The translations under genes were made by a program, and so were the position numbers. Source: Hemiscyllium ocellatum (lineage: Eukaryota). From it: a stretch of 64,000 nucleotides of DNA. Location of the stretch: the NCBI RefSeq assembly GCF_020745735.1, contig NC_083409.1, positions 18,372,341-18,436,340 on the forward strand, written 5' to 3'. The first letter of the stretch is position 1. Each line of letters opens with the position of its first letter. The notes beneath the pieces are model-generated. The model had not been told where the DNA came from, searched no databases, and saw nothing but the letters and a program-made list of their open reading frames with translations. Shown here piece after piece: positions 30,751 through 60,752 of this stretch.

Positions 30751-30769
30751 TACAATTAGAGTCAGAGGG

Positions 30770-33980: not shown

Positions 33981-34309
33981 TCCGTGACAACTCTCAGCCC
34001 AAGCTGACCCTGCTGCCCCCCTCCCCTGAGCAGATTAATGCCAAGGACACTGCCACCCTGGTGTGCCTTGCCAATCACTTCTATCCCGATGAGCTGGAGG
34101 TGCAGTGGAAGAAAGACGGTGCAGTCATTTCGGACGGGGTTCAGACCAGCAACTACCTGCGAGCTTCGGACAGCACCTACAGTGTCAGCAGCCTGCTGAC
34201 CCTCTCTGGGTCTGACTGGGAGTCCAACGCTCGCTTCTCCTGTGCCCTCACCCACGTGACCCTCCCCTCTCCCCTCAGCAAGAGCATCAGGAGATCAGAA
34301 TGTGTGTAG
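33981..34309 (+). CDS. IGKC: Ig kappa-type constant exon
   Basis: Acceptor TTTGTCTTTCAG|TC, phase 1 matching J; (I)RDNSQPKLTLLPPSPEQINAKDTATLVCLANHFYPDELEVQWKKDG...FSCALTHVTLPSPLSKSIRRSECV*; both C1-domain Cys, the Trp and the penultimate interchain Cys are intact. Confidence 0.97.
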
Positions 34310-34834
34310 AGTGTTGGAGACAGTCCACAGAGGAGACACAACTTTAAATAGAACAGGGCTGAGCTGGCAGGACAAAGGTCATTGTCAGCACTGAATTTCA
34401 ACTCTCTTCCTTCTCAGGACTGCTCAGGGAACCTTCTGAGGTTTGGATGTTAAAGCAGATCATTGCGACAGTGTCGAGGGAGCTTTATGCTGTGTCAAAC
34501 CCCATGCTGTCCCTGTTCTGGGAGTGTTTGATGGGGACAGGGTTGACTTGTGATGCCAAGTAAAATCTCTTGAAGTTGCTGAAGACTGTCAGCTGTACAA
34601 AACAATGTGAACCTCAGAATTCTCTGCTTCAGTAAACCAGATCTCCTTCCTGCTCAGCTGTCAGTTCCAATTTAAGGTTTTGTCACTGTTTAAAGGGACA
34701 GGATTCTCATGTTATTGAGCAATTCTCCACAAATGTTTTCCTTAAACTCCATTGTGGCTGTGAATTTGAGCAGCTTCCTCTGTCTGGGCTGTTAATTGCA
34801 GTTTTTTTTCTGTCAATGTGAATGTGGAAAAGGG

Positions 34835-36719: not shown

Positions 36720-36910
36720 GTCATAAAATCCCTACAGTGAGGAAACAGGCCACTTGGCCCAACATGTCAACACTGACCCTTGGAAGAGTAACCTACCCAA
36801 GACCCAATCCCCTGTCTTATTACTCTGCTTTTCCCCTGACTAATGAGCCTAACCTACACATCCCTGACCACTGTGGGCAACTTAGCATGGCCAATTCACC
36901 TAACCTGCAC
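36720..36910 (-). mobile_element. 3' half of an HE1-type SINE abutting the Penelope element
   Basis: Matches the tail half of 2681-2975; the tRNA head is absent. Confidence 0.7.
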
Positions 36911-39302
36911 GTCCATCCTGAGAAAAGGGCTCACATTCGTTGCCTACTTCAAAAAACCCCGCACCCACCAGGACGTGGAGCTCTTCTTCCGCCGCCTCTA
37001 CCTCCGTGTCTTCTTCTTTAACAAAAACTCCCAAACTCCCTCTGAGGACCCCTTCTCCCATCACCAACCTTCCTCCTCCACTTGGTCACCCCCCCACCCC
37101 CCCCACCAACAGCTGTGTACACACCCTAGAGCTCTTTATTGCTGACCACTGATGTGACATCATCTGCCTCAATTTCTCCACCTCCCCTCACCCTCTCCAA
37201 TCACCCCTCCTCCAAACGTGCAGCCCTCCACTCTCTCCGTACCAACCCCTGGTTCACCATCAAACCCACTGACAAAGGCGGTAGTCTGGGGAACGGACCT
37301 CTATGTCGCAGTGGCCGAACCCCAACTCTCTGACACCACGTTCTGCCTCCCCCTTGCCCATGACCCCACTGTGACCCATCAGGCCAAAATCACTCACACT
37401 GTCAGTGCCCCCATTGCCTCCAGTGATCTCCCCTCCACTGTCTCCAATCTCATAGTCCCCCAGCCCTGCACTGCCCAGTTCTACCTGCTCCCCAAGATCC
37501 ACAAACCCAACTACACCGGCCGACCCATCATCTCAACATGCTCCTGCCCCACCGAACTCCTCTCATCCTACCTCAACTCCATCCTCTCCTCCTGGGTTCA
37601 GGCACTTCCCACCTACATCCGTGACACCAACCATGCCCTCCATCTCTTCAGAAACCTTCAGTTCCCAGGCCTCCAGCACTTTACCTTCACTATGGACAGT
37701 CCTTATATACGTCCATACCCAACAAGATCAGCCTCCTGGCCCTCTGCTTTTTTCTCTCCAACAGATCCATCCACTCCCCCTCCACCAATACCCTCCTCCA
37801 TCTGGCCCAACTGGTCCTCACCCTCAACAACTTTTCCTTTAACTCCTCCCAGTTCCTCTAAATCCAGGGGTGGCTATGATTACCTGGATGGGCCCCAGCT
37901 CCCCCTGCCCCTTTATTGGCTATGCTGAACAGTCCCTCTTCAGTGCCTACACAGGCACTGTGCCCCAGCTCTGCTACCATTACATCGATGACTGCATTGG
38001 TGCAGTGACCTGCACCCAGGCTGAACTGGAGCAGTTCATCGTCTTCACCCACAACTTCCACCATACTCTCAAATTCACTTGGTCCACCTTGGACACCTCC
38101 CTCCCCTTCATTGACCTCTCCATTCCCATCCCCAGCGACAGTGTTCAGATAGACATTTACTGCAAACTCACAGACTCCCATTATTACCCAGACTATGCAT
38201 TCTCACACCCAGTGTCCTGCAAGAACTCTATCCCATTCTTCCAATTCCTCCACCTCTGCTCTATCTGCTCGGATGAGGAAACATTCCACTCCGAAGTATT
38301 CCAGATGTCCACCTATTTCGAACAACATGCTTTTGCTCCCTCTGTCATCCATCGCACCACCTCCATTTCCCATTCCACTGCTCTAAACCCACCCCCTCCA
38401 AACAGAATAAAGACAGAGTGCCCATTGTCCTCACCTATCACCCAAACCAATCTCTGTATACAACACATCATCCTATTCCGCCAACCCCAACAAGACCCCA
38501 CCACCAAGAATCTCTTCCTCACGCTACCCCTGTCTGCCTTCCACAAGGACTGTTCTCTTTGACAATTCTTGGTTTGCACCACTCTCTCCACCATCTCTCC
38601 TGAACCCCCCGGTACCTTCCCCTGCAAACAGAAATGATGCAAAGCCTGCTGGTACACCAACCCCAGCACCTCCATCCAGGGCCCCAAACAGTCCTTCCAG
38701 GTGAGACAGAGGTTCACCTGCCTCTCCTCCAACCGAGTTTACTGCATCAGGTGACGGCGATGTGGTCTTCTCTACATCTGGAAGACCAAACATAAACTTA
38801 GGCAGCGGTTGGTCGTGCATCTCAGCTGGGCCTGTAGGGGCCGACCAGACCTCCCAGTCACCACCCATTTTAATTCCCCTTCCCACTCCCTTTCCAACAT
38901 GACCATCCTTGGCCTCCTCCATTGCCACAATGAACCAAACTGCAAATTGGAGGAACAATACCTCATCTTCTGCCTGAGCAGCCTACAGCCCAGAGGATTC
39001 AACACTGAGTTCTCCAATTTCAAATATCTTCCCTTGTCATCCCCTGACTCCCTCCCCAGCCCCTCCCATCTCTTCCAGTCCTCTCTGCCACCAAACAGAT
39101 TCATTCCTTCCATTGACGAATCAGGTCGTGTCCTCTGCCTGTCTTCATCTATCCCCGTTCTCCACTCTGCCCCTGCCACCCCCTTTATCTGCAGCTCCGC
39201 CTACACCCACCACCATTCCTGAAGAAGAGTTACACCCAAAACATTAACTTCTTCACCGCCTGATGCTGCCTGACTTGCTGTGTTCCTCCAGCCTCCTGCC
39301 TG
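36911..39302 (+). mobile_element. Decayed Penelope-like element (RT + GIY-YIG endonuclease)
   Basis: IKPTDKG, FYLLPKIHK...GRPIIS, YIRDTNHAL, AMITWMGPS, YHYIDDCIG, LPFIDL, DIYCKLTDSH; GIY-YIG-like FTCLSSNRVYCI at ~38710-38750. Confidence 0.85.
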
Positions 39303-39629
39303 TCATTGAATGGAACCAGCAGGAAAGGGCTGGACAATCAAGGGTCAGGGCCATCAACAAATGGGAATGGGACACACTACAGATAGATGCATTGAGACAG
39401 TCAATTACAAAGAGAAGACCAAACTGGAAATGAAACACTCATACACAGTGGACAGAATTTAATATCAGAAAGTGAGACCATGCACTTTGTTCAGAATAAT
39501 CGAAAGGCCGACTAGTATTTAAATAGTGAGAGATTCCAACAAAGTGCAATACAGAGTGATCTGAGTAGTATTGTGCATGAAACACAGAAAGTAAGTACAG
39601 CAAGGAATTGAGAAGGCGAATGGAATTTT

Positions 39630-39933
39630 AGATTACTTACAGTGTGGAAACAGGCCCTTCGGCCCAACAAGTCCACACCAACCTGCCAAAGTGCAACCCA
39701 TCCATACCTCTACATTTACCCCTTACCTAACACTACAGGCAATTTAACATGGCCAATTCACCTGACCCGCACATCTTTGGACTGTGGGAGGAAACCGGAG
39801 CACCCACAGGAAACCCACGCAGACACGGGGAGAACATGCAAACTCCACACAGTCAGTCGTCTGAGTCGGGAATTGAACCCGGGTCTCAGGCGCTGTGAGA
39901 CAGCAGTGCTAACCACTGTCCACCGTGCCGCCC
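39630..39933 (-). mobile_element. HE1-type SINE (present only in the left arm of the inverted duplication)
   Basis: A and B boxes on the minus strand (GGCACGGTGGACAGTGG; CGGGTTCAATTCC) and GTAATCT tail. Confidence 0.85.
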
Positions 39934-42480
39934 ACACGGCCACCCACAACCTTTGTTGTCTGGGGTTGGAATTTAAAAGTAGAGAAATCTTCTTAAATCT
40001 TTAAAGGGTATTAGTGAGCCTGCATTTGAAGTATTGTGTGCAATTTTTGTCCCTGTATTTAAGAAATGATGGACTCCTGCTTCTATTTCTCATGTCCTTG
40101 TGTGCTTCAGTGTCCTTCCCTCACAGCACAACTGGTTTGTCCCCTGCCTGCAGTAGCAGCCTCCAGTCTCTGGGTGGTGCTGCCATATGATCTGCCTTGC
40201 CCAGGCTGTCACAATTCCCACATCACAGCAATGCCAGGACTTCGGAAGTATTGAATTGGCTTTAAAACATTTTCCAACATCCAAGCTCAAAAACGGCAAA
40301 ATACGAATATAATTCTCTCTCGTTTTATGTTTTGTCTCCAAGCCTTCCCACCTGTCATCCAACAACATCGCACACTTGTGTAAAATCTGGAATGGATCAT
40401 GAATCTCTGGGAGAACTTACTTTGTGACAACACTGGGTCTAATGACCACATCCTCAGTGTGCTTTGAGGATGAAGGTCAATAGCAGTCTCACTGGGACTT
40501 GGTCTGAATTGTCTCCAGTCAGTCAGTGCTTTTGTCTGGTCCAAACAGCATTGACTAACCTTAGACCCCTGTGATCTGATTGAGATGAAGGGTGAGCTGT
40601 GCTGGACTTTCACTCATGGCTCACACACATGGTGAAGTAGGGGTTACCCATTTCAGAAGAGTAAATGGAACGAACGAACCGGGTGGATGTGACATCCCTA
40701 CCTGTCCCCAAGAGAGTGGAGACAGGAACAGTAATATTCTCACACAGAAAGGATGGTAAAAATTTTAACCCACAGAGAGAGAGGGGACAGGAAAAGCAAT
40801 GCTCCCTAAAGACATGGGACAGTATCTGTCTGTTCCCCACTTTCTTGTTGTGTTGTGACCATGGGAAATTGATTTGGTTTATATTTTCTCCATTGTATTT
40901 AGGTTTGATGAGGTGATTCATTAACAAGGATTCCAATTGCATATTTCCTGTAGCAGCAGATCCATTGAAGATCACATTTTCATTTGGAATTTGCCCAAGT
41001 TTCTGTGCAGGCTGATGCAGCATGGTCTACCAGTGCTGCTCCTATTGGGCTAAACCATCACACACGAGGGAATCTGACGGACACTTTCTCTTTGTGCTGA
41101 CAAAGGGAGAGTTTTGGTTTTACTGCGATGGTGGCCAGAGAAATTAGTCAGTGGATGTAGTTTCAACTGAGCAGAATGTTCTGATGTTCATGATGGGATT
41201 AACCACGACAGTTCCCACTTACCTTTACACTGACAGTGGGGCAGGAAGTCACCACACAGTGGTCTCCTGGCTCACACTGAGAAACCAAGTTGATGGTCTA
41301 ACTGCAGAGAGCAAGACAATGGCTTTGACTAACCGAACAACCAGAGGCTTCAGCCAACATCTGGGTCACCGGCAAATGGCGTGTTGTATAAACTCTCAGT
41401 ATCTCAGGGAACATTCATTGACAAACATAACTACAAAATGGAACAGGATATTGTTTATGAAAATTGGCATTGCAAAAATAAAATCCAAACACATTATAGA
41501 TAATCTCATTTCAAAGACTACAGCATTTTCTTTGAAAACTGGACGATAGTGAGATGAGAAATCAAACACCCATCCACTCCGTCACACAGAGTTGAAGACG
41601 CACTGTCCTCATCATAACAGGTTTGCAAGCATCTGAATAACACATAAGTGGAGAGAAACATTGCAAACTGTATTATCATGAGAGAGGATCCATTAAAACC
41701 TAGAACCATGATGTTAAATGCTCCCTGCTATAAACAACACTGATGCATTCACATCATTGGAATGTTAAATTATTTAAATCTCAAGAGGCATTGATGATTT
41801 TTTTTCCAAGTCCATAGCAAGGAAGCAGCAGCTGACATATGAACTCTAACAAAATGATAACAGGCACTGAATACAGAGCTGACTCCAGAGAGAGAAGAAA
41901 AATCAACAGCAGAAATCTGTCCAGTGCTGGGAGAATTTTAGACAAGACACCTTGTTGCCAGCAGCTTGAAAACTCCAGTACGGTCAGAAAGAGAAAAAGG
42001 ACAATGTGCAGATTGTTGAACAGGCCCCTACACCTGGGCCTGAGGCAGGAGCCCAAGCTCCAACACACTGGCCTCACGTCACACCAACCTTCACACAGTG
42101 CGGGGTCATGAACTCCGGCCATCAATCCCTCTGGGACAGGGACGGAGTGAGGGAACAGGGACAATTGTAGAAGAGTCAATAAGGAGTAAAGCAAGATGGA
42201 GAGGGTGTTTTGGAAAGGGGTTAGAGGAGGAAATATACTTTGTGCCACTCAGTACAGACATCATCTACGTGTATCACAGAATGAACAAAACAGCACACTG
42301 TGAAGACAAACGAAAGTCACATCAAAGTACTTTTCTTATCACATGGGACATTTTCATTGTGGTGTGATAAGTACCCTGCTTCTAAAGCTGCACTGCCTCT
42401 CTATGGGTCTCTATAGATTCAGCCTCTTTGCTCTAAGCAGAGTCCCAGTTAATTTTTTACTGATCAGGGACAATGAAGCA

Positions 42481-42510
42481 CTACCCTCTAGTGGCGAGAG
42501 AGCGCTTGCA
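42481..42510 (-). promoter_or_regulatory. Candidate CTCF binding site with upstream motif
   Basis: Minus strand reads TGCAA-N11-CCACTAGAGGGTAG, one mismatch to the CCACYAGRGGGCRS core. Confidence 0.5.
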
Positions 42511-45384
42511 CTGATGCTGAGGATTATGGGTAAAGTCCCCTTCCATTGGCGCCCACACACACCAGCAGCCACTTCAGCTGCTTTATTGAAAACCACAAGC
42601 TTTCAAGGTGCTGTTCTTTCAACGGTGGAACTGGACACACGATCAAATGAGTGAGTGGCAGAGGAAGGAGATTCATCCTCTTGAGCCTGCTCCCCATGGC
42701 TGACCTGATTATTCTACATTCTTGCCTTACTCTGATAGATTCTTGAAAGCAATGGCTATCTACCTCTTCATTACAAGCATTCAGAGGTTTCATTTCTATG
42801 TTTGATGAAGAGTTCCGAAGATCCATGACCTTATGCAAGAAAAAGAACCTGCTTATCTCCGTCTTCTATGAGGGAATTTGTTTTAATTTGATATTCTCGC
42901 TGAAAAGGAAACATGCTTTTCACATCCACGCTGTATTCTATGTTCATGTTGATATGGCATCTGCTTTAATCAGCTGCTCTCTTATGAGAACAGCAGCCTA
43001 TCCTGCCACCTTCAGTGACTGATGCACAAAAATATCCAGATCCAAGTACCCCTACACCCATCCATACTTGTACCCTTTAGTTTGTTTTGTCTCCCCTGTT
43101 TTCTTTCCAAAATGAATCAGTGACATCTCTTTCCATTAAATTGTTTCTACAGCTATCTGCTCATTCCATTAACTTATCTACATCCTTTTTGAAGTTAGAA
43201 CTATCTTCTTCATCAGCTGTAATACATCCAAGTTTCATACCATCAGCAAATTTTGAAGTTATGCCTTGTGCACTCAGGTTAACATAGATTTAAATATTTT
43301 AAATATTTTTTAAAATGAACTATTTTATAAACTATTGTAAATTAAACCACAAATTTATTGCCCATCCCTAGTTACTCGGACTGAGTTCTGAGCCAGATTA
43401 TGGGGCCATTAAGAATGAATCACGTCACTGTGGGACTGGAGTCACAGACGGGATGATGACTGGGTTCCCTTGTCCAAACTACATTCATGAACACGACATT
43501 GAGTTTCATGGGTTTTATTGTTCTGATCGCAGCGCCTTCCTTCCCAGATATTATATGGCTCACCACCGCCCTCTCCAGGACAATTAGGAAAGGGCAAAAA
43601 ATAGCAGCCACTTTTGTGCCCACCCATCCTCGGAGAAATCAATATAAATGAGATACTCTTCAAATGATCAAACTGGTGAAGCTTGAATTCATCTCTTTGA
43701 AAGACTGGACCCTCGGCCAGAAACAGAGCCATGACATGGGTGACCCTGGTTTGTCAGACTGAAAGGTGGAGTGTCCTTCGGATTGACACTGAGATCAGAC
43801 ACAAAATGAATTATACTGAAAGACTGAACAAACTGCTATCAAAACGGGTCACCAAACTGGAAAGAGCAGCAATTTATCTGGGAGACCTCAACAGGTATCA
43901 ATGGGTGTAAGAGCATTCGGCAGGCAAGTGTCAGATATTGTTGAACACACCAGAAACACAGTCACACAGAAAGGGAAGCAATTGGGATAGAGCAGGGAAA
44001 CGGGAATAACTGAATTTCTCCACTGAGAGCTGGAAGAGGTTTTCTTGGTTGTAACTCCTCTGAGAACAAAAAAGGTTGAAGGGTGGTCTATATTATAAAC
44101 AATACTGCAGCACGCAAGAAAGGATTCAAGTGACAGATCTCCTTTAACTTAGAAAAAATATCAGAAATAAAGGTCAATGTGATTTTGGATTGAATATTGA
44201 TAGTGAGGAGATGGAGGGGAGAGTGACCATGGTTAGGTCATGGCTAGAATGGTGCACGGTTAGGGGCTGCTTTGAGGGGCAATAGATAATGGGACATGGA
44301 TAGGGGATCTTGGGTCACAAGAGAAGTGCAGGTTGGCAAATGGAAAATGCCATGGAAAATGCAGGATTACAGGAATAGGGTGGGGAAGGTGTGCGTCTGG
44401 GTGGGATGGCCTTCAAAGGGTCAGTATGAGCTTGCTGGGCTGTGTGTCCTGCTTCCAATCTGTAGGAATTCCTCGATTCTGTGATTCTATGAAGGCCAGA
44501 CAGGATCTTGACAGTGGAGGGAGGGTGTTCTGGTGTTCAAAAGTTCTTAAACAAATAATCACAGTAAATGTAGATTTACTATCAGTGCAGATAAACTGAA
44601 AGGCAAAATGACATATTCTCCAGTCATATACCAGGTACAGAAAAGAGATCAGGAAAAACATTTTGATGCAGTTATTGGAATTGAATGATGAATGATGATA
44701 AACAGAGTGCTCCATTCAAATAAAGACAGAATTTTAGAATTTCAACAGGCCTGAAGTAAAACAGGAAATCAGGTTCAAATAGTCATTTGAGAATATAGTA
44801 CTTGAGTGAGACAAAACCCTTCTTGTGGAAGCATTTCTTTTTGCCTTGCTTTCTCTCCATGGATGCTGCCTGACCCGCTGGGATCTTCATTATTTTGCTG
44901 CGCTATTTCTTACAAAATGTCTTGTTGGGTGCAAGACAAAAGCTTTGACAAAATGTCTCTTTTTTTTCAGCAACACTTGAATTTGGATCAGTTTGGAGAG
45001 AAAGCAGGGCCATGGAATCATCTTTCCCTGTCGGGAGGGAGGGAGTGTGTGTGGAATCTCCCATGGGCAGGGTTCTCCTGGCTGCCACCACATCAGGAAG
45101 GCTGGAGCTTGATGATCGAGCTGAATGGACAGGGCTCGCTCTCACAGTCCTCAGGGCCATGGAACCTCTTGTGATGGGAGCATCTGCTTGGTGTCGAGGG
45201 CAAGCAATGACATTGCAGTGGGATTGGAAATGGATGCTGCACAATGGCTGCACCGATTCTTCCTCTCTGCCTGATCCCTCCCCACGAACAGGAGAAGTTG
45301 CATTAGAAACCTGTTCTAAAGGGCTACAACCCACTGCAGCACTCCCAACCTGCAAAGAGAAGTTCACTTCTACAAAGACTTTGC

Positions 45385-46055
45385 CAAGGACAGATATTCC
45401 TGCAACTTCATCCACAGGTGCATAACAGACAAACAACGTGATGAGGGTATGCCACGACCTAACCCACTAGCCACACTGCCTTATATAAAAACATCACAGA
45501 ACTCCAACCACTCATAAACAGCCCAGAAACTGATAGCCACGCTCAGACAACCCACGAGAACAAAAGGCCCAATACCCACCGTGTGAAAGACAGATGGAGT
45601 TTACAAGAATCCATGTAATGTTTGCACAAAACACCTCGGACAAACAGGCAGACAACTAGCCATCCACATCCATGAACACCAACGAGCCACTAAACCCCAT
45701 GAGCAGCTGTCCCGAGTAGCTATACACACAGATGACAAGGACCACAAATTCGATTGGGCCAACACTATGATCATAGGACAAGCTCACCAGAGGGCAGCCA
45801 GAGAATTTATAGAGGCATGACACTTATCCATGGGCTCCATCAATAAACACATTGACCTAGACTCAGTACACCGACCACTTCAACGAACATCCGGAACCAA
45901 TAACTGGAAACAGCAGGAATGGAACCAAATAAATTCCAGAAGACACAGCACAACAGCGCTTCACAGGAAGCTCCAAAGCTCTGAAGATGTCACTGAGACA
46001 GGGGACAAAATGTCTACAAATCAACTTCCCAGCTCGGTGAGCATACCCACAACTA
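45385..46055 (+). mobile_element. Penelope-like 3' fragment (GIY-YIG region), family distinct from 36911-39302
   Basis: Frameshifted GVYKNPC..C..H.GQTGRQLAIHIHEHQ...HKFDWANTMIIGQA at ~45595-45790, followed by a CTGAAGATGTCAC-type end. Confidence 0.7.
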
Positions 46056-46399: not shown

Positions 46400-46800
46400 G
46401 ACAGTACATGACATCAAGACCTCTTTGATGGTGTGTGGCATCAAGGAGCCTGAGCAATGCAGCAGCTTTTCACCTGCTATTCCAGGGAAGGGATCAACAT
46501 CTGGATCCCTCTGAGCAACTCCTGGGAGTTCTGTCATCCCAAAGGGACACATCCTCTTCCTCAGTTCCCACAAACAGCAGCAAATCAGCCACACACTGTC
46601 CAAACTGTTTGGGGGAGCTGACCTGAACTCTCACAGCCCTGTGCCATGCTCTGCTGGAAGATGGAGGGACTATTGGGGAGTCCTTGGCACAGACAGCTCC
46701 ACCAATATTGTTGGTCTTTAAACGTGAAGTAGAACTTTTCCTGGTCCTCAGCCCTCCCTGCTCCGATATGGACCAGAACACGTTCAAAATGACCAACTGT
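46400..46800 (-). pseudogene. Retrovirus-like reverse transcriptase relic
   Basis: Across frameshifts: ILNVFWSI ... EKFYFTFKDQQYWWSCLCQGLPNSPSIFQQ ... QCVADLLLFVGTEEE, matching the RT motif series DxxxxFxSI / FxFT..QYxW..LPQGFxNSP / YVDDLL. Confidence 0.65.
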
Positions 46801-46999
46801 GTAAAGACCCACTGCCAGTAAAGTTTTCAATACCTTTGAAAGGTTATGGTTGTTATTACAACTCAACATGTCCCCAACAAACAGTCTCCTGGACAGGGAC
46901 AGAATAAGGTTAGATACAGAGTAAAGCTCTTTCCGTACTGTTCCCACCAAAGACACACAGGACAGGGACAGGATAAGAAACAGAATAAAGCTGTCTCCA

Positions 47000-47319
47000 T
47001 ACTGTCCTCGTCAAACACTTCAGGACAGGGACAGCACTGTTTGGGTACAGAGTGAAGCTCTCTCTACAGTGTCACAGTAACCTGCCTTAACCCCTGAACC
47101 TCAGATTCTCCTAGAGGCCAGTCTCAAGAAGGAAGAGAGTTAAATTCAGTGCTGAAAATGACCTTTGTCCTGCCAGCTCAGCCCTGTTCTATTTAAAGTT
47201 GTGTCTCCTCTGTGGACTGTCTCACACACTCTACACACATTCTGATCTCCTGATGCTCTTGCTGAGGGGAGAGGGGAGTGTCACTTGGGTGAGGGCACAG
47301 GAGAAGTGAGCGTTGGACT
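47000..47319 (-). pseudogene. IGKC: Inverted, 5'-truncated Ig kappa C exon relic with 3'UTR
   Basis: 47231-47317 encodes SNAHFSCALTQVTLPSPLSKSIRRSECV*, 84/87 nt identical to 34223-34309; 3'UTR homology continues to ~47000. Confidence 0.93.
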
Positions 47320-47799
47320 GGCAGAAATATCAGTTTGAATATTTGTATCGGATACCTAACAAACCCGATGTTTTTTAAATTCCTTTTTGATTGTGGATAT
47401 TGAAGCCCCCCACCCAGAGTACATTCTGTGCCCTCACTACCCTCAGAGCTTCCTCCAAGTGCTGTTCAACATGGAGGAGAGACTGACTCATCAGCCGAGG
47501 GGACAGTACGTGGTCATCAGCCAGAGGTTTCACAGAATCAGAGAATCATACAGTGTAGAAGAGGTCCCTCATCTGATCATGTCTGTCCCACCAAGGCAAA
47601 ACTAAATCTACTCTCCATCAGCTTTCCAGAACTGGATCCAAAGCATTGAATGTTCGGATATTTCAGGTGCCCATCCAGGTATATTTAAAAAGGTGTATTT
47701 TATGGGGATCTGCTCTGCTCTTCTCATAGTGTCATGGCATCTTCTACTGTCCCCTGAGAGGGCAGACATCAGAACATCCTACCTGAAAGATAATCTTTT

Positions 47800-48072
47800 A
47801 GCACTGAACCTCTGACAGTGTTGCACTCCCTCAATATTGACACACCAGCAGTGCAGCACTCCCTCAACATGAACTATCTGATAGTGTGGCACTCCCACGG
47901 TATTGACTTTCTGACAGTGTGGCCTTCCCTCAGTACTCACCCTCTGACAGTACTGCACTCCCTCAGTGCTGACCCATCATTAGTGCAACTCTCCATCAGT
48001 ACTGACCCTCCAATAGTGTGGCACTCCCTCAGTGCTGACTTTCTGACAGTGCTGCATTCCCTCAGTGCTGCA
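47800..48072. repeat. ~31-bp minisatellite (about 9 degenerate units)
   Basis: Units like CACTCCCTCAGTACTGACCCTCTGACAGTGTGG. Confidence 0.85.
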
Positions 48073-50183
48073 CTGCACTCTCAGTCTGGATAATTTGCTT
48101 CAGTGATAGAATCATGTAATGATGGAATTTGTACAATGTTGAAGCAGGCCATTCACGCCAATGAGTTCACACCAATCCTCCGAAGAGCATCCCACCCAGA
48201 TCCAAACCACTGCACTATCCCTGCAACCCTGCATTTCCCAATGGCTCATCCACCCAGTCTGCTACATTGTGAGTGTGAGGGGAGAGTGCTCCCCACTGAG
48301 ACCAGTCTGACACCTCCCGGTTCAATGGCCTGCCTTGTTTCCCCATCCCAGCCCACACTTGGAGTAATGAGACCGCCTGGGGAGGCTCGAGATGTTTTCC
48401 AGCCAGAGATAGTGCCTTCAGGAGAGAGATGGAGAGCAGATGTTAGGGGCAGGAAGCAGTGGGGTCTGTTGTCTTGAGGTGGGGTGTAGGACACATTGAA
48501 GCAGGCGATGGCAGGTGCTGAACCCTTTCCCCGGAAGGAGTTTGTAAGTTGATCGGTGAAAGTGAGGGGTGGGGGGGTGGAATCTCTTGCTGCCTGCTCA
48601 GTCACGTCTGAGAGACACACAGACACATCAGACACACAGGAGGCAGCTTTCTGTGGATGTTCTCCTGGGGCAGGTCTCATCAATCATGGAGCTATGGTCA
48701 GTAAACAGTGTAAGCTGTTCGGCCCTGAAAGCCTGAGTCTGCAACTCAGCTCGGAAGGACGTCAGCTCATTCATCAAAACTGGTTCAGCCCCTCCGTAGC
48801 CTAGCTGGTCTGCCTGTGCCATTTCACCACTCTCAGGTTTTCCCTTGTGCCACAGATCATTCTCCTGAGGGACAGCTGTACTCAGGCCCAGCGGAGTGGA
48901 CTCGATGGGCTGAATGGCCTTACTTCCACTCCTGTGTCTTATGACCTTGTCACTCTGTCAGATCCTCTGCAATAAACTCATGGTTAACCATCGCCCTCTC
49001 CAGGATAGTTAGGGAAGGACAATAAATAGCAGACACGTCAATGCTCTCCCCATCCCAGGAGTAATCAACATAATTGATGGACAATTCAAACAATCAAACT
49101 GATGGAAGGTGGTTCAATCATTCCAGTCATTAAACTTCACCTGGTAATTCCTGTATTAAGTTCAAGGTGAAACTATCCTGGTCTCTGCTGAATTTAGATC
49201 AATTTTCTTTGTTAACTTAATACATTTCCATCTTCATTCTTTCTCTCCAAACTGACCCTAATTTGAATGTTGCGAAAAACAAAACATTTTGTTGAAGCTT
49301 TTTGTCTTGCATGCATCAGGACAATTTACAAGAAATGCCACAGCAAAGGGAAACAATATTTAAACTGGCGTGTTCATAGTGACAACACCTCAGCCTGTCA
49401 GCACTTTCCTCATATGCAATATCAATGTCATGTTTTTCTCCTTTGATTGGTACTTTTACAATTATCCTGATGAGGGCAAAATGAAAAGCTGCCAAACACC
49501 GGGCATTTTTCAGGCCAGTTCAATATTCTCAAATGACTATTTGATCCTAATTCGCTCTTTTGCTTCAGACCTGTTCAAATTCCAAGAAGTAATTCTGTCC
49601 CATTTTGAATGGAGGACCCAGTTTACCAGCACTCACTAAATTCCAATCTCGGCATCAAAATATTTTTCCTGATCTCCTTCCTGTCCTTGGTGTATGACCA
49701 GAGAATGTGTCATTTTGTCTTTCTGTTTGTCAGTATTGACAGTAAATTTACATTTACTGTGTCAATTTCATAATGAAGTTTTGTTATCAGAATACCCTCC
49801 CTCCCCCCTCAAGATCCTGTTCTGGCATTTCCTTGTAACCTCGATCTCCTATCCCTGTCCATTCTGCATTGCCCCTCAATGAAGGCCATAACTATTCACC
49901 ATATTCCAGATGTGACCTAACCATTCTTCAGTACAGCTGTCCTGGCCACTCTCCCCTCTATCTCCTCACTCTCAATATTCATTCCAAAGTCCCATTGGCC
50001 TTTCCCATGACTGTTCTTATCAGGACAGGTGTCGAGTTGCGAGTCATCAGAGCTAGTGGAGAGACCATCGCCGGATCGTGATTGGACGTTGGAGGATCGT
50101 TTGGTTGTGCTGACCTGCTATTGGTGGATCTTCATGCTGGCTTCAGCCTAACGCCAATTCAGGGACCAGCCAATCTCGGAGCC

Positions 50184-51662
50184 ATGGCCTCAGCAGCCGT
50201 TCGCAGCCCTGGCCAGGGCATTCGCAACACAGTCAGGGTGACTGTGAAGAAGGTGGAGGAGCACACACCAGTCGATCGGACAGTGTTTGTGAAGAAGGTT
50301 TTGCTGGAGTGCTGTGGGTTTGCAGCAGTGGATGTGTACTGCCTGCAGGATTTCCCTGGGGCAGGTTACTTCGAGGTGACCTTCAGGAGCGTGAAGCATT
50401 GTGAGCAGCTCCTGAAGGTCTTCAAGGAGAAGGAAGGGGAGCCGCTATTCTCCATCTTGTCGGCGGTCCCATCGTGTGTGCTTCCTGCGCAGAGAAGTCG
50501 GGTTGTTACAATCCAAATGTACAACCCCTACGTCCCAGCGGCAGATGTTCTCACTTTCTTGAAGAGGTATGTCCAGGTTGAAGGAGAAAGCACCGATGTC
50601 GTTGATCCTTTCGGGATCTGGACAAGTAAAAGGCAGGTCAAGGTAACCCTGAGGGTCGATGGCAGCGGGAACATCCTCCACCCACCCTCGAGCTTCGCAA
50701 TTGGAGGGAGCAGAGGCTACCTGACGTACGCAGGGCAGCCGAAGGTGTGCCGAACCTGCGGGAGGTCAGGCCACATGGCGGCCGACTGCAAGGTGACCGT
50801 ATGCCGAAATTGCAAGCAGGAAGGCCACCTGACCAAGGATTGTAAGGAGGCCAAAAACTGTAACCTGTGCGGAGAGGCGGGCCACATGTACAAGGCCTGC
50901 CCAAGACGAGGAGCCGCTACCTACGCACAGATGGCCGGAGGTAGCAACACGAATACGAGCCGCGGACCAACAAAGGCGAGGAAGGCAAATGAAAATAGCG
51001 TGGAAACGGTGCCTGGAGGCACCCAGAAGGAAGAGCAGGCAGTAGCGGAGCAGACGGCAGACAGCGGGGAGGTGCAGCAGCCGACCCAAGCTCCGTCAAT
51101 GCAGCCGGAGGAAATGGAAGAGGAGGAATCAAAGGATGCAGAGGACTGGATCACAGTCAAAAACAGGAAGAGGAAACCTCTTGGGGGCCCCAAAGCCACC
51201 CAGCGAAGGGGAAAGCGACACCTACAAGGTGAAGACGCATGCAGCTCTTCCGATGGTGAGGATGGGCGCAAGAAGGGTCGTCATCAGAGGAAGAGGCAGA
51301 GCGTTGTGAGGAGAAAGGAGGGCAGCACCGCCCAGGAAGGAAAGGACGATCCCTCTGAGGGGACGGGTAATGGCCTCCCCCTACCCGGTGAGAACCAGGA
51401 GGTACTCACCGGCCCACAGCTCCAGGTATCTGGGAGCAGCGGTCCTATGACAGCCCTGCTGTCAGACGGAGAACTGGTCAGTGCGGACCACGGGCCCGAC
51501 ACGAAGACAACAGAGTGGGGTAATGGCCCCAGCGCGGAGCTGGACAGTTACCTCAGCCCTGCGAAGGTCCAACAGTTTGCCGCCACCACAGGGATGCACG
51601 CAGCTACCCCAGAAGGGCAAGACCAGCAGCAAACGGACACCGGTAAACCTGTAAACTGTTAA
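50184..51662 (+). CDS. Tx1 copy A ORF1, 492 aa (RRM-like region + 3 CCHC zinc knuckles; ZCCHC3-like)
   Basis: Open frame from ATG 50184; CRTCGRSGHMAADC, CRNCKQEGHLTKDC, CNLCGEAGHMYKAC; low-complexity C-terminus. Confidence 0.9.
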   Translation: MASAAVRSPGQGIRNTVRVTVKKVEEHTPVDRTVFVKKVLLECCGFAAVDVYCLQDFPGAGYFEVTFRSVKHCEQLLKVFKEKEGEPLFSILSAVPSCVLPAQRSRVVTIQMYNPYVPAADVLTFLKRYVQVEGESTDVVDPFGIWTSKRQVKVTLRVDGSGNILHPPSSFAIGGSRGYLTYAGQPKVCRTCGRSGHMAADCKVTVCRNCKQEGHLTKDCKEAKNCNLCGEAGHMYKACPRRGAATYAQMAGGSNTNTSRGPTKARKANENSVETVPGGTQKEEQAVAEQTADSGEVQQPTQAPSMQPEEMEEEESKDAEDWITVKNRKRKPLGGPKATQRRGKRHLQGEDACSSSDGEDGRKKGRHQRKRQSVVRRKEGSTAQEGKDDPSEGTGNGLPLPGENQEVLTGPQLQVSGSSGPMTALLSDGELVSADHGPDTKTTEWGNGPSAELDSYLSPAKVQQFAATTGMHAATPEGQDQQQTDTGKPVNC

Positions 51663-51663
51663 A

Positions 51664-54600
51664 ATGGGGTTAAAAATTGCTAGCATCAACGTGCGTAGCA
51701 TCAAATCGGCTACGCGATGCGTTTCAACACTGGCCTCCCTGGCCAGCGTCAAAGCCGACGTCCTGTTTCTGCAGGAGTGCGGGATACCCCACCTCAGCAG
51801 TTACAGGAGGTGGTCGAGCTTGTGGGCCCATGGGCCGTCAGTGTGGTCGGGGGGCAACGATAACCGCTCCTCAGGCCTAGGGATCCTTTTGCGGGGAGGT
51901 AACTTCACTATCTCCGAGGTTAAGGAGGTGGTGGGCGGGCGCCTCCTCGTCGTGGATGTTAAATACAGAAACGCTCCCGTAAGACTAATCAACGTGTACG
52001 CCCCAGTGGGTAAGAGTGAACGGTTGGCCGTCCTGCAACAGCTTCCACTGCTGCTGGCTACGTCCAGGCCGGTCATTCTGGCCGGAGACTTCAACTGCAT
52101 CATTGATGCAGATGGACGATCCGGCGGGGGGGACAGTAAACTGGACGCTACGTCCAGAGCCCTGATGGAAACGGTCAAAGATGCCAAGCTGCACGACGTC
52201 TTCAGCACCCCTGCAGATGGAGCGCAGCGTAGATACACATGGTCACGGGCAGACGGGTCTATCCGCTCAAGGATAGATTACCTGTTTGTGTCCCGAACGT
52301 TCTCGGTCAGAACCACCGACGTCAAGCCGGTGTTCTTCTCTGACCACTGCCTCCTACTGGCCGACTGTCACCTACAGGACGAGCAGCGGACGGGCAATGG
52401 AACGTGGAAACTGAACACTAAGCTGTTGACCCCGGGAAACATCGAGGAGCTCAAGAGGGATTACGCAGGTTGAAGAACCGCGAAGCCCCTCTTTGAGTCT
52501 CCAGCAGACTGGTGGGAAACAGTAAAAGGGAACATCAAGAGATTCTTCATCCTCAAAGGTGTTCAGGAGGCGAGAGAGAGGCGGGGAAAACTGTCCCAAC
52601 TCCAGAAAAGTATGCAGAACCTGCTCCTGCTGCAGACGTTGGGGGTCGATGTCACGGAGGACCTCAAGGAGGTGAAGGGCCAGCAAGCCTCGCTCTTTGC
52701 CTCGGAGGCCTCCAAGATAATCTTCCGGTCCAGGGTCCGCTTGGTAGAGCAGGACGAGACGTGCTCACGTTTCTTCTTCCAGAAGGTGCACAAAGAGAGC
52801 TCTGTGCTCAGCAGCCTGAAGGAAGAAGACGGCTCGGTAACGTCATCTCAGGCTGACATCATGAGGATCAGCAAATCCTTCTATGCCAGCCTGTATGACA
52901 CGAAGCCAACCGACAGCACGGCCTCACAGTCGTTCCTGTCCTCTATCACGGAGGTCCTAGAGGACGGAACACGCGAGAGGCTGGACCAGCCGCTATCTCT
53001 GGATGAGCTGACCAGGGCCCTCGAGTCCTTCGAAAAGAATAAAACTCCCGGAAGCGACGGCTTACCGGTTGAGATCTATTCCGCTCTTTGGGACTTGATT
53101 GGCCGGGACCTGCTGGAGGTGTATGTCAGTATGCTTCGGGCAGGTACCATGAGTGAATCCATGAGGAAAGGCATCATCACCCTCATCTACAAGCGGAAGG
53201 GGGAGAGGGACGAAATTAGAAATTGGAGACCGATCTCACTGCTAAACACAGACTACAAAATCTTGTCAAAGGTCATCGCTAACCGGGTCAGGTCTGCTCT
53301 GGGAACGGTGATCCACCCCGACCAAACCTGTGCTGTACCGGGCAGGAAGATCTCTGAGAGCCTCGCACTCCTCAGGGATACGATCGCCTACGTGCAGGAC
53401 AGGGGGGTGGACACCTGCCTCATCAGCCTGGACCAGGAGAAAGCCTTTGACAGGATATCGCATACATATATGAGGGATGTCCTCTCCAAAATGGGCTTTG
53501 GGGAGGGAATCTGCAATTGGATCAGACTGCTCTACACCAACATTGTCAGTGCAGTCTCAATCAATGGGTGGGAATCAGATAGCTTCCCTGTAAGATCTGG
53601 AGTCAGGCAGGGCTGCCCACTCTCTCCTGCCTTGTTTGTATGTTGCATAGAGCCATTTGCCGAATCCATCAGGAAGGATGCGAGCCTGAGAGGGGTGACT
53701 ATCCCTGGCAGCGGGGGCCTACAGGTTAAGGCCTCCCTGTACATGGATGACGTCGCCGTTTTCTGCTCGGATCCGCTGTCCGTGCACAGACTCCTGTGCA
53801 TCTGCGACCAGTTCGAGCGGGCCTCGGGGGCCAAGGTAAACCGAGGGAAGAGCGAGGCCATGCTCTTCGGGAACTGGACCGACCAATCCTATATCCCCTT
53901 CACCGTCAGGACTGACCACCTGAAGGTGCTGGGTATTTGGTTCGGGGGTGCTGGGGCGTGCGCCAAGACCTGGGAGGAGCGTATCAGGAAGATGAGACAG
54001 AAACTAGGCAGATGGGAGCAACGGTCGCTCTCCATCGCGGGGAAAAACCTGGTCATCAGGTGCGAGGTACTCTCAGTATTGTTGTATGTGGCACAGGTCT
54101 GGCCTATCCCCAGAACCTGTGCTGCCGCAGTCACCCGGGCCATCTTCCACTTCATGTGGAGATCAAAGATGGACCGGGTCCGAAGGGACACAATGTACAA
54201 AGACCGGTGCAATGGGGGAAAAAACACTCCCAATGCCACCCTCGCCCTGATGGCCACCTTTGTGTGTGGCTGCATCAAGCTGTGCGTGGATCCCCGGTAC
54301 GCAAACACCAAGTGTCACTACGTACTGAGGTTCTACCTGTCCCCGGTGTTGCGAAGGATGGGCCTGGCCTCGCTGCCGCGGAACGCTCCGAGTAGTTGGA
54401 CCGTTCCGTACCACCTGTCCTTCGTGGAGAAATTTCTGAAGAAAAACACCTTTGACCACAAGTCCATCAGGAAGTGGTCAGCACGTAGCGTCCTTGAGAC
54501 CCTTCGGGAAAAGGAGAGGGCGGATCCTGTTGAGTGGTTCCCTGAGCAGACTGTCAAAGCAATTTGGCAGAATGCCTCATCGCCAGAACTTTCTAACAAG

Positions 54601-55070
54601 CACCAAGACATGGCTTGGCTGGTGGTGAGAAGGGCTCTACCTGTGAGATCGTTTATGCACGCCCGGACTCTCTGCCGCACCGCACGCTGCCCTCGAAGCG
54701 GCTGCGGGGGGGACGAGACTGTCACACACCTCCTTCTGGAATGTGCCTATGCAGAGGAAGTCTGGAGAGGAATGCAGTGGTATTTGTCAAGGTTCGTCCC
54801 GAGCAGCGCCGTGACGTGGGACTCCGTGCTCTACGGCCTGTTCCCGGGACGCACACCGAGACGAATATCAACTGCGCCTGGAGGATCATCAACTCGGTGA
54901 AGGACGCTCTCTGGGTGGTCCGAAACCTGTTGATCTTCCAGCTGAAGGAGTTGACCCCGACTGAGTGTTGCAGACTGGCACATTCCAAGGTCCAAGACTA
55001 CGTGTTGAGGGACGCGCTGAAGCTTGGGGCAGCTGCCGCCAAGGCGCGGTGGTGAAAGACCACCGTTTAA
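51664..55070 (+). pseudogene. Tx1 copy A ORF2 (APE-RT-CCHC), disrupted
   Basis: SINVRS, FLQEC, GDFNC, SDHC, YMDD, CPRSGC...HLLLEC; in-frame TGA at 52471-52473 (TGG in copy B), 1-bp loss near 54845, and TGA at 55053-55055 (GGA in copy B). Confidence 0.9.
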
Positions 55071-55324
55071 CATCTGCCTGTCTAAAGAAGATCAGGGGGC
55101 CCATGCAGTCATTTGGGCTCTGCTGACGCCTCAGCCCAATATAAGGGCATAGGAGTGAGAAATGCACAGACTTGCATGTAAAAAGGAAAATTCTAAACTG
55201 TGTATGTTAATGTGAACATATGTATGGCATTACCCAATGTACAGTGTATCAAATTATTTATGAATATTTACGAATAAAGTATATTTTGAAATTAAAAAAA
55301 AATTGGCCTTTCCCATGTCTGTTC

Positions 55325-55656
55325 TTATCAGGACAGGTGTCGAGTTGTGAGTCATCAGAGCTAGTGGAGAGATCATCGCTGGATCGTGATCGTGATTGGA
55401 CATTGGAGGGTTGTTTGGTTGTGCTGACCTGCTCTTGGTGGATCTTCATGCTGGCTTTGGCCTAATGCCAATTCAGGGACCAGCCAACCTTGGAGCCATG
55501 GCCTCAGCAGCCACTCACAGCCCTGGACATGAGGTTCAAAACACAGTCAGGGTGACTGTGAAGAAGGTGGAAGAGCACACACACTGGTTGATCGGCGCAT
55601 GTTTGTGAAGAAAGTGGTGCTGTGGGTTTTGAGTGGTGTGTACTGCCTGTAGGATT
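55325..55656 (+). mobile_element. Older Tx1 5' fragment (copy C): 5'UTR + start of ORF1, 3' part missing
   Basis: Homologous to 50017-50350 with CpG-to-TpG/CpA decay and small indels; ends at ...CTGTAGGATT where copy B begins. Confidence 0.8.
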
Positions 55657-55868
55657 CTGCTTGAGAGCTGCAGGTTCGACGCTGCGGAAGTGCGCTGGCG
55701 GGAGAAAAACCAAGGGGTTCGTGTTGCGAGTCGTTGGAGCTGCTGGAGACCATCGCTGGATCGTGATTGGCCGCTGGAGGATCGTTTGGTTGTGCTGACC
55801 TGCTCTTGGTGGATCTTTATGCTGGCTTCGGCCTAACGCCAATTCAGGTATCAGCCAACCTCAGAGCT

Positions 55869-57341
55869 ATGGCCTCAGCAGCCGCTCGCAGCCCTCGCCA
55901 GGGCATTCGCAACACAGTCAGGGTGACTGTGAAGAAGGTGGAGGAGCACACACCGGTCGATCGGACGGTGTTTGTGAAGAAGGTTTTGCTGGAGTGCTGT
56001 GGGTTTGCAGCAGCGGACGTGTACTGCCTGCAGGATTTCCCTGGGGCAGGTTACTTCGAGGTGACCTTCAGGAGCGTGAAGCATTGTGAGCAGCTCCTGA
56101 AGGTCTTCAAGGAGAAGGAAGGGGAACCTCTGTTCTCCATCTTGTCGGCGGTCCCGTTGTGTGTGCTTCCTGCGCAGAGGAGTCGGGTTGTGACAATCCA
56201 AATGTACAACCCTTACGTCCCAGCGGCAGATGTTCTCACCTTCTTGAAGAGGTATGTCCAGGTGGAAGGCAAAAGCACTGATGTGGTCGATCCTTTCGGG
56301 ATCTGGACCAGTAAGCGGCAGGTCAAGGTAACCCTGAGGGTCGATGGCAGCGGGAACATCCTCCACCCACCCTCCAGCTTCGCCATCGGAGGAAGCAGAG
56401 GTTACCTGACATACGCAGGGCAGCCGAAGGTGTGCCGAACCTGCGGGAGGTCAGGCCACATGGCGGCCGACCGTAAGGTGACTGTATGCCGAAATTGCAA
56501 ACAGGAAGGCCACCTGACCAAGGATTGCAAGGAGGCCAAGAACTGTAACCTGTGCGGAGAGGCAGGCCACATGTACAAGGCCTGCCCAAGACGAGGAGCC
56601 GCCACCTACGCACAGATGGCCAGAGGTGGCAACACGAGCCGGGGACTGCCAAAGCCCAGCAGGGCACCACAAGATCGCACGGAAATGGTGCCTGGAGACA
56701 CCCAGAAGGAAGAGCAGGCGGTAGCGGAGCAGACGGCAGACAGCGGGGAGGTACAGCAGCCGATCCAAGCTCCTTCAAGGCAGGCGGAGGAAATGGAAGA
56801 GGAGGAATCAAAGGAGGCAGATGACTGGATCACAGTCAGAAATAGGAAGAGGAAACCTGTCTCGGGCCCCAAAGCCACCCAGAGAAGGGGGAAACGACAC
56901 CTCCAAGTCGAGGATACAGGCAGCTCTTCTGATGGTGAGGACGGGCGCAAGAAGGGTCGCCACCAGAGGAAGAGACAGAGCGCCATGGGGAGAAAGGAGG
57001 GCAGCACCACCCAAGAAGGGAAAGACGATCCCTCTGTGGGGATGGGTAAAGGCCTCCCCCTACCCGGTGAGAACCAAGAGGTGTCCACCGGCCCACAGCT
57101 CCAGGTAACTGGGAGCAGCGGTCCTGTGACAGCCCCGCTGTCAGATGGAGAACTGGACGGTGCGGACCCTGGGCTTGACACAAAGACACCAGAGCGGGGA
57201 AATGGCTCCAGCGTGGAGCCGGACAGCTACCTCAGCCCTGGGATGGTCCAGCAGTTTGCCGTCACCACGGGGATGCACACAGCTACCCCAGAGGAGCAAG
57301 ACCAGCAGCAAATGGACACTATTAACCTTGTAAATTGTTAA
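55869..57341 (+). CDS. Tx1 copy B ORF1, 490 aa
   Basis: Open from ATG 55869; the first knuckle has lost its final Cys (…GHMAADR), knuckles 2 and 3 are intact. Confidence 0.88.
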   Translation: MASAAARSPRQGIRNTVRVTVKKVEEHTPVDRTVFVKKVLLECCGFAAADVYCLQDFPGAGYFEVTFRSVKHCEQLLKVFKEKEGEPLFSILSAVPLCVLPAQRSRVVTIQMYNPYVPAADVLTFLKRYVQVEGKSTDVVDPFGIWTSKRQVKVTLRVDGSGNILHPPSSFAIGGSRGYLTYAGQPKVCRTCGRSGHMAADRKVTVCRNCKQEGHLTKDCKEAKNCNLCGEAGHMYKACPRRGAATYAQMARGGNTSRGLPKPSRAPQDRTEMVPGDTQKEEQAVAEQTADSGEVQQPIQAPSRQAEEMEEEESKEADDWITVRNRKRKPVSGPKATQRRGKRHLQVEDTGSSSDGEDGRKKGRHQRKRQSAMGRKEGSTTQEGKDDPSVGMGKGLPLPGENQEVSTGPQLQVTGSSGPVTAPLSDGELDGADPGLDTKTPERGNGSSVEPDSYLSPGMVQQFAVTTGMHTATPEEQDQQQMDTINLVNC

Positions 57342-57343
57342 AA

Positions 57344-60300: not shown

Positions 60301-60752
60301 TGGTGGTGAGAAGGGCTCTACCTGTGAGATCGTTTATGCACGCCCGGACTCTCTGCTACACCGCACGCTGCCCTCGAAGCGGCTGCGGGGGGGACGAGAC
60401 TGTCACACACCTCCTTCTGGAATGTGCCTATGCAGAGGAAGTCTGGAGAGGAATGCAGTGGTATTTGTCGAGGTTCGTCCCGAGCAGCGCCGTGACGCGG
60501 GACTCCGTGCTCTACGGCCTGTTCCCCGGGACGCACACCGAGACGAACATCAACTGCGCCTGGAGGATCATCAACTCGGTGAAGGACGCTCTCTGGGCGG
60601 TCCGAAACCTGTTGATCTTCCAGCTGAAGGAGTTGACCCCGACTGAGTGTTGCAGACTGGTACATTCCAAGGTCCAAGACTACGTGTTGAGGGACGCGCT
60701 GAAGCTTGGGGCAGCTGCTGCCAAGGCGCGGTGGGGAAAGACCACCGTTTAA
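57344..60752 (+). pseudogene. Tx1 copy B ORF2 (APE-RT-CCHC) with a single +1 frameshift
   Basis: Open 57344-59671, resumes in another frame 59673-60752; one extra base in the G-rich tract at ~59621-59640 relative to copy A. Confidence 0.88.

What the first reader, a model, noticed from the sequence alone, without database searches (positions are those of the whole stretch)
47000..47319. Inverted orphan Ckappa fragment 13 kb downstream of the functional C
Seen: the last 28 codons plus stop (84/87 nt identical) and ~230 bp of 3'UTR on the minus strand, with no V, J or 5' two-thirds of C nearby. Its position is not symmetric with the 3-kb inverted duplication, so it records a separate event. Inference: the remnant of a deleted head-inverted cluster. 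Together with C it forms a long-range inverted repeat that could drive inversion or conversion, or yield antisense RNA against kappa mRNA.
Basis: partly seen in the sequence, partly recalled or inferred. Interest (0 to 1): 0.75.

Follow-up and report, generated by a model that had tools for sequence, protein, structure and literature searches.

The report
Decayed shark kappa constant-gene relic
This is the broken remnant of a second, oppositely oriented antibody kappa light-chain constant gene in a shark genome: an ordinary dead gene copy of the kind that multi-copy antibody gene families leave behind, with no sign of a function of its own.

Summary
Window 47319-47002 (minus strand) copies 34221-34540: the last 28 codons, the stop and about 230 nt of 3'UTR of the intact kappa C exon (blastn E 2e-95; 84/87 nt in the coding part).

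A further 265 nt (47584-47320) are a relic of the J-C intron. It holds 73 nt matching the intron just before kappa C exons. It also holds a LINE endonuclease fragment cut off at the same point, and lying at the same place, as in a paralogous kappa cluster of Chiloscyllium punctatum.

So the fragment is a genomic, non-processed C-gene copy. It lost about 308 nt (the splice acceptor and the first 80 codons) in one deletion with a 3-nt AGT microhomology. It is not a 5'-truncated retrocopy, and an assembly error is unlikely.

No V, J or other C piece lies elsewhere in the window. The copy points tail-to-tail at the working gene, so any V/J would lie beyond the window end.

The longest perfect match to the live C is 67 nt, which is poor substrate for inversion.

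Verdict: an ordinary pseudogene relic.

The parts
47393..47584 (-). J-C intron relic, part 1: a 3'-truncated LINE (AP-endonuclease domain) fragment, reading ...GGFNIH and then stopping
   Evidence: It matches C. punctatum L002 13799-13977, which lies about 130 nt upstream of that cluster's C exon, in the same orientation and with the same truncation point. A longer copy of the same LINE at window 17921-18325 runs on past this point. The atlas places that longer copy with Exo_endo_phos_2 / endonuclease-reverse transcriptase clusters. Pfam gave no hit.
47320..47392 (-). J-C intron relic, part 2: 73 nt homologous to the intron just upstream of kappa C exons (functional copy 33836-33915)
   Evidence: Local alignment scores are 32 (own intron), 45 (L001) and 32 (L002). 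Shuffled-sequence scores are 18 +/- 3.3, and the best of about 300 control window segments scores 30. The alignment ends at TGCCAGT = 33909-33915.
47317..47319 (-). Deletion junction: AGT shared by the intron side (33913-33915) and the exon side (34221-34223). About 308 nt are missing, namely the last 65 nt of intron with the acceptor and the first about 243 nt of the exon.
   Evidence: No placement of the junction gives GT...AG ends, so this is not a splice product (read directly from the sequence).
47231..47317 (-). Last 28 codons of kappa C plus the TAG stop; 84/87 nt identical to 34223-34309, with R>H and H>Q changes
47126..47230 (-). Proximal 3'UTR: 101/105 identical to 34310-34415, with one 1-nt deletion
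47002..47125 (-). Distal 3'UTR: about 71% identical to 34416-34540
   Evidence: The orthologous intact genes are only 74% alike here.
46822..47034 (-). Copy-specific expansion of a 64-nt unit (single in the live gene), followed by fading homology to 34504-34587
   Evidence: TRF finds period 64, 1.9 copies, at 46912-47034. The local alignment scores 49 against shuffles of 21 +/- 2.3 and ends at 46822. L001 and L002 also match 46855-46932.
33981..34540 (+). Intact kappa C exon (33981-34309) and 3'UTR of the neighbouring V-J-C cluster, used as the comparison copy
   Evidence: C1-set E 6.5e-23; 96-98% identical to annotated H. ocellatum and C. punctatum kappa chains.

Best explanation
The fragment is a non-processed (duplication-derived) pseudogene relic of the C region of another kappa light-chain cluster, lying tail-to-tail with the intact cluster. 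Shown: it keeps, in the right order and on one strand, a piece of J-C intron, the last 28 codons with the stop, and the 3'UTR. Shown: one internal deletion of about 308 nt, with a 3-nt microhomology, removed the splice acceptor and the first 80 codons, so no constant domain can be made. Inferred: the cluster arose by inverted duplication within the kappa multigene family. Its C exon stayed like the others, through selection or homogenisation, until it was disabled. The rest of the cluster was then lost to deletions and overwritten by retroelements, or lies beyond the window. Inferred: it has no present function. This is birth-and-death turnover of shark Ig miniloci.
For: 1. Collinear homology runs intron - exon end - UTR. 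The intron part is statistically supported.
2. The intron relic carries a LINE endonuclease fragment truncated at its 3' side within 2 nt of the same point as in C. punctatum cluster L002, where it lies about 130 nt before the C exon. LINE copies normally lose their 5' ends, so two independent insertions ending at the same place are unlikely.
3. The deletion junction shows AGT microhomology and no splice-site ends.
4. The copy has its own history: 6 private changes in 195 conserved nt, a private expansion of a 64-nt unit, and flanks at about 70%. It is therefore not a mis-assembled duplicate of the live C.
5. The family is multi-copy. Several annotated kappa genes sit on one H. ocellatum chromosome. 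About 50 NS4 genes, including pseudogenes, are reported in nurse shark (PMC2193156).
Against: No V, J, further intron or cluster-tail homology is found in the window, so only about 760 nt attest the lost cluster. Detectable 3' homology fades at about 34587, some 20-25 nt after an AGTAAA at 34559. That is where an mRNA would end, and a retrocopied unspliced transcript would look the same. The exon and proximal UTR resemble the L001/own-cluster type (95-96%), while the LINE-bearing intron resembles the L002 type. Explaining this mosaic needs either conversion or loss of the LINE in the other lineage. The true nearest C gene in this genome could not be fetched. The assembly junctions were not checked with reads.
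Confidence: 0.75

Rival explanations
1. A LINE-mediated retrocopy of an unspliced (germline or sterile) kappa transcript, 5'-truncated inside the intron and later hit by the 308-nt deletion.
For: Homology fades near the predicted cleavage site after AGTAAA at 34559. Earlier notes of this scan report LINE-made copies of host mRNAs in this genome (lead only, unchecked).
Against: There is no A-rich tract after 46822 and no target-site duplication. The intron is retained. It needs two rare events instead of one. At about 65-70% identity the 3' limit is a detection limit, not a mapped end.
Confidence: 0.08
2. A classic 5'-truncated processed pseudogene of spliced kappa mRNA. This is what the reported anatomy (exon end plus UTR only) would suggest at first sight.
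For: The reported fragment is the 3' end of the last exon plus UTR.
Against: Intron sequence lies directly upstream, collinear with the exon piece. There is no poly(A) tail.
Confidence: 0.02
3. A gene fragment picked up or moved by a transposable element. The relic lies between two inverted copies of a retroelement and next to a reverse-transcriptase fragment.
For: The relic sits in the middle of the 4.2-kb spacer between inverted repeats 44169-45017 and 50003-49226. An LTR-type RT fragment lies at 46639-46746 on the same strand (RVT_1 E 0.0014; atlas).
Against: The adjacent LINE fragment belongs to the kappa intron itself, as L002 shows. No second copy of the relic with its flanks exists in the window or in L001/L002. 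The flanking repeats are separate elements with their own insertions.
Confidence: 0.05
4. An assembly artefact: a misplaced or chimeric join.
Against: The copy differs from the live C by private substitutions, an indel, a repeat expansion and a 308-nt deletion, and its flanks are unique. A collapse or false duplication would be near-identical.
Confidence: 0.03
5. A retained functional element: a source of antisense RNA against kappa mRNA, or a partner for inversion or gene conversion with the live C.
For: 195 nt are 96% identical in inverted orientation 12.7 kb away.
Against: The longest perfect match is 67 nt. Two of the three coding changes are non-synonymous. There are 6 private changes against 2 in the live gene, which fits unconstrained drift. 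No promoter evidence exists and nothing could be tested for transcription.
Confidence: 0.05

Closest known systems
Non-processed pseudogenes and relics in immunoglobulin multigene families (birth-and-death evolution), for example pseudogene members of the nurse shark NS4/type III kappa clusters (PMC2193156)
   Same: A duplicated genomic copy that keeps intron and UTR homology and is disabled by a deletion, in a family of tens of V-J-C miniloci.
   Different: Only about 760 nt survive, with no V or J in view. The orientation is convergent with an intact cluster. The published shark pseudogenes I could read about are V-J-region defects, not C-exon relics.
Oppositely oriented IgL (V-J-C) clusters of teleosts, which allow inversional rearrangement between clusters (zebrafish, PMC3014032)
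   Same: Light-chain clusters in both orientations on one chromosome.
   Different: Here the inverted partner is dead. It has no RSS-bearing segment in view, so no inter-cluster rearrangement can be inferred. I used only the title and abstract of that paper.
Processed pseudogene (5'-truncated retrocopy)
   Same: On first view it looks like the 3' end of the last exon plus 3'UTR.
   Different: Intron sequence is retained upstream. There is no poly(A) tail and no target-site duplication.

Membership tests
Shark kappa (type III / NS4-like) light-chain C gene | A complete C1-set Ig domain exon of about 108 codons | tested here: not met
   Only the last 28 codons survive. The intact neighbour scores C1-set E 6.5e-23.
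Shark kappa (type III / NS4-like) light-chain C gene | A splice acceptor joining J to C | tested here: not met
   The acceptor and 65 nt of intron are removed by the 308-nt deletion.
Shark kappa (type III / NS4-like) light-chain C gene | Sequence homology to kappa C exon, intron and 3'UTR, in order | tested here: met
Non-processed (duplicated) pseudogene | Retains non-exonic (intron or flank) homology to the parent gene family | tested here: met
   A 73-nt intron relic plus a shared, truncated intronic LINE fragment.
Non-processed (duplicated) pseudogene | A disabling lesion | tested here: met
   An internal 308-nt deletion. The in-frame ORF is only about 32 codons.
Processed pseudogene / retrocopy | No introns | tested here: not met
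   Intron sequence is present upstream.
Processed pseudogene / retrocopy | A poly(A) tail at the mRNA 3' end and flanking target-site duplications | tested here: not met
   No A-run lies after 46822 and no direct repeats bracket the relic. Age could have erased them.
Functional antisense or recombination partner | Transcription of the minus strand, or an inversion polymorphism between 34.3 and 47.2 kb | not testable with these tools

The most novel reading that the evidence does not exclude
The relic marks a formerly complete convergent kappa cluster, and its 195-nt near-identical inverted match to the live C is still used. The use would be either as a gene-conversion partner that takes part in homogenising C exon plus proximal 3'UTR across clusters, or as the template of a minus-strand transcript that pairs with kappa mRNA 3' ends.
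Probability: 0.04. Interest if true: 0.5.

Novelty: new member of a known kind. Interest (0 to 1): 0.15.

Why it matters
On its own it matters little. It is one more dead copy in a gene family that evolves by duplication and loss.

Its modest value is as a record. It shows that kappa miniloci in hemiscylliid sharks were duplicated in both orientations, and that they are removed piecemeal by microhomology deletions and retroelement insertion.

The comparison also exposed an unusually conserved stretch: the C exon end plus about 106 nt of 3'UTR is 95-98% identical across two genera, against 70-88% in the flanks. That stretch may deserve study as a regulatory or homogenised segment.

Tried and rejected
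1. **Reads and RNA.** No long-read check of the assembly, no stranded RNA-seq and no poly(A)-site mapping were possible, and read laying was not used.

2. **Other kappa clusters of the same genome.** Fetching P0018, P0019 and P0021 from GCA_020745735.1 returned no DNA because the file is too large. The chromosome-level C. punctatum assembly failed the same way. The relic's nearest C gene in this genome is therefore unknown.

3. **The orthologous Chiloscyllium locus.** L001 ends at the equivalent of window 40481, before the relic's position. Presence of the relic in the sister genus could not be tested.

4. **Retrocopy idea.** This was my first guess from the exon-end-plus-UTR anatomy. I dropped it after finding the intron relic.

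5. **Template-switch chimera of LINE plus mRNA.** Dropped because the same LINE fragment sits in the intron of L002.

6. **Large palindrome idea.** The arms would be 36909-45017 and 49226-63929, with the relic at the centre. I downgraded it. The arms are Penelope-like retroelement copies. The apparent b-c contiguity comes from insertions at one shared target nucleotide.

7. **Splicing origin of the 308-nt gap.** No placement of the junction gives GT...AG ends.

8. **Pfam on transposon fragments.** It gave nothing for the LINE endonuclease and Penelope-like pieces. Those assignments rest on the atlas and on motifs I recognise.

9. **Rfam.** A scan of 30-50 kb found no RNA family.

Full report

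**What is there.** The window holds one unrearranged kappa light-chain cluster on the plus strand.
- The V exon ends about 22076, followed by a 12-spacer RSS at 22077.
- A 23-spacer RSS lies at 22541, with J (FGKGTKL) at about 22581-22619.
- The C exon is 33981-34309, about 11.4 kb further on. It scores C1-set E 6.5e-23 and is 96-98% identical to annotated kappa chains of Hemiscyllium ocellatum and Chiloscyllium punctatum.
- Earlier notes of this scan name the genome as epaulette shark. The protein matches and the 83-88% collinear DNA match to a C. punctatum locus fit a hemiscylliid shark.

**The observation.**
- Self-BLAST confirms that 34221-34540 matches 47319-47002 on the opposite strand (86.4% over 324 columns, E 2e-95).
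- The coding part, 47317-47231, is the last 28 codons plus the stop. It has 3 differences in 87 nt, giving R>H, H>Q and one silent change.

I fetched two C. punctatum loci through annotated proteins.
- L001 is the orthologue of the window's cluster. Window 19217-40481 is collinear with L001 12359-38797.
- L002 is a paralogous cluster with germline-joined VJ.
- On the minus strand, directly upstream of the orphan, 47552-47395 matches L002 13828-13977 (E 6e-27). This lies upstream of the L002 stretch (14340-14661) that matches the orphan itself.
- The matching segment is a fragment of a LINE endonuclease domain. A longer copy of the same LINE at window 17921-18325 reads on through GGFNVHH, EWLGS... 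and ...SDH. The atlas places it with Exo_endo_phos_2 endonuclease-reverse-transcriptase clusters.
- In both the orphan and L002 the fragment stops within 2 nt of the same point, on its 3' side. In L002 that point is about 130 nt before the C exon.
- The 73 nt between the LINE fragment and the exon piece (47392-47320) align with the intron just upstream of the C exon in all three reference copies. Scores are 32, 45 and 32, against 18 +/- 3.3 for shuffles and a maximum of 30 for control genomic segments.
- In the live gene this alignment ends at TGCCAGT (33909-33915). The exon homology starts at AGTCC (34221).
- The orphan is therefore a C gene with one internal deletion of about 308 nt. The deletion removed 65 nt of intron with the acceptor and the first about 243 nt of the exon. 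Three bases (AGT) are shared at the junction. No placement of the junction gives GT...AG ends, so it is a DNA deletion and not a splice.

**The 3' side.**
- The first 106 nt of UTR are 96% identical to the live gene and the next 125 nt only about 71%.
- This step is not special to the orphan. The orthologous live genes of the two genera show the same profile: 97.8% in the exon end, 95.3% in the proximal UTR and 74% in the distal UTR.
- In the orphan a 64-nt unit that is single in the live gene is expanded (TRF, 46912-47034).
- After the expansion, weak homology continues to about 46822, which corresponds to 34587. That is 20-25 nt past an AGTAAA at 34559.
- Nothing further of the cluster tail is found down to 43 kb.
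- An LTR-type reverse-transcriptase fragment follows at 46746-46639.

**Origin.** The retained intron, with an old LINE fragment shared with a paralogous cluster of another genus, shows a genomic duplicate.
- It rules out a processed retrocopy.
- The private substitutions, indel, repeat expansion and deletion make a mis-assembled copy of the live C very unlikely.
- In the conserved 195 nt, the orphan, the live C and its Chiloscyllium orthologue form a star. Private changes number 6, 2 and 5. One site groups the orphan with the live C and one groups it with L001.
- Orthologous flanks differ by 12-17%. A neutrally drifting 195-nt piece would therefore have collected about 13 changes since the genera split.
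- Six changes suggest the copy was still constrained or homogenised for much of that time and was disabled later. This is an inference from few sites.
- The intron is of the L002 type, while the exon and proximal UTR are of the L001/own-cluster type. This mosaic needs either conversion of the exon region or loss of the LINE in the other lineage. I could not resolve it, because DNA of the other H. ocellatum clusters could not be fetched.

**Orientation and the missing V/J.**
- The relic points towards the live C (tail-to-tail), so its V and J would lie to the right.
- That stretch is 1.6 kb of repeats, an 11-kb Tx1 LINE stack (49995-60977) and a 2.7-kb retroelement, up to the window end.
- tblastn finds no V or J there. 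The intron of the live cluster is itself 11.4 kb, however, so the segments may lie outside the window rather than be deleted.

**The '3-kb inverted duplication'.**
- 36909-39629 and 63929-61183 (82% identical) carry LPKIHKP, YIDD and GIY-YIG-like motifs.
- They match atlas clusters that combine HTH_animal, RVT_1 and GIY-YIG at 0.97.
- They are therefore two Penelope-like retroelement copies in opposite orientation.
- Two further collinear pieces are 39949-40138 with 61181-60975, and 44169-45017 with 50003-49226.
- Both copies are interrupted at exactly the same nucleotide, CTGGTTT^AAAGG. The left copy is interrupted by 4.0 kb and the right by the Tx1 stack.
- This fits the site preference for a TTTAAA box in a common repeat that earlier notes describe for this Tx1 family (lead only).
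- The relic lies close to the middle of the 4.2-kb spacer between the two copies. I found nothing that ties it mechanistically to them.

**Function.**
- Nothing suggests one. The in-frame ORF is about 32 codons, two of the three coding changes are replacements, and the longest perfect match with the live C is 67 nt.
- Rfam finds nothing in 30-50 kb.

**Comparison with what is known.**
- Shark light-chain genes are tens of V-J-C miniloci, some germline-joined and some pseudogenes (PMC2193156).
- Teleost IgL clusters occur in both orientations (PMC3014032; title and abstract only).
- A decayed C-region relic is an expected by-product of such a family.
- I found no paper on H. ocellatum Ig loci.
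- Earlier notes of this scan mention other broken or orphan kappa copies on this chromosome (unchecked).

**Verdict.** This is an ordinary pseudogene relic of low interest.

Noticed in passing
Both are interrupted at exactly the same nucleotide (CTGGTTT^AAAGG): one by a 4.0-kb insert (40139-44168) and the other by the Tx1 LINE stack (49995-60977). This suggests a site-specific landing spot inside this element.
   Followed up: partly
L002 9839-11198 (C. punctatum BEZZ01000502.1): This paralogous kappa cluster is germline-joined. The window's V end (22079) and J start (22581) abut at L002 10538, and protein P0020 reads through V-J without interruption.
   Followed up: partly
window 34221-34415 with L001 28709-28905: The end of the C exon and the first 106 nt or so of 3'UTR are 95-98% identical between Hemiscyllium and Chiloscyllium orthologues. 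The next 125 nt are 74% and the flanks 83-88%. The proximal 3'UTR looks constrained or homogenised.
   Followed up: partly
window 27563-33800: The J-C intron of the live cluster is 11.4 kb, against about 3.5 kb in L002. About 6 kb of it has no counterpart in L002 and is probably made of repeat insertions.
   Followed up: no
window 47803-48070: A 33-nt tandem array of about 8 copies (68% matches) lies just upstream of the relic on the minus strand. Its origin is unknown.
   Followed up: no
window 45587-45817 (+): A short ORF has a GIY-YIG-like motif (GVYKNPCNVCTKHLGQTGRQL...EH). It is probably the 3' end of another Penelope-like element. Pfam gave no significant hit.
   Followed up: no
proteins P0001 and P0002: Shark kappa light-chain sequences are deposited as partial proteins of Aeromonas veronii and Salmonella enterica. 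They are evidently contaminating reads in bacterial assemblies.
   Followed up: no
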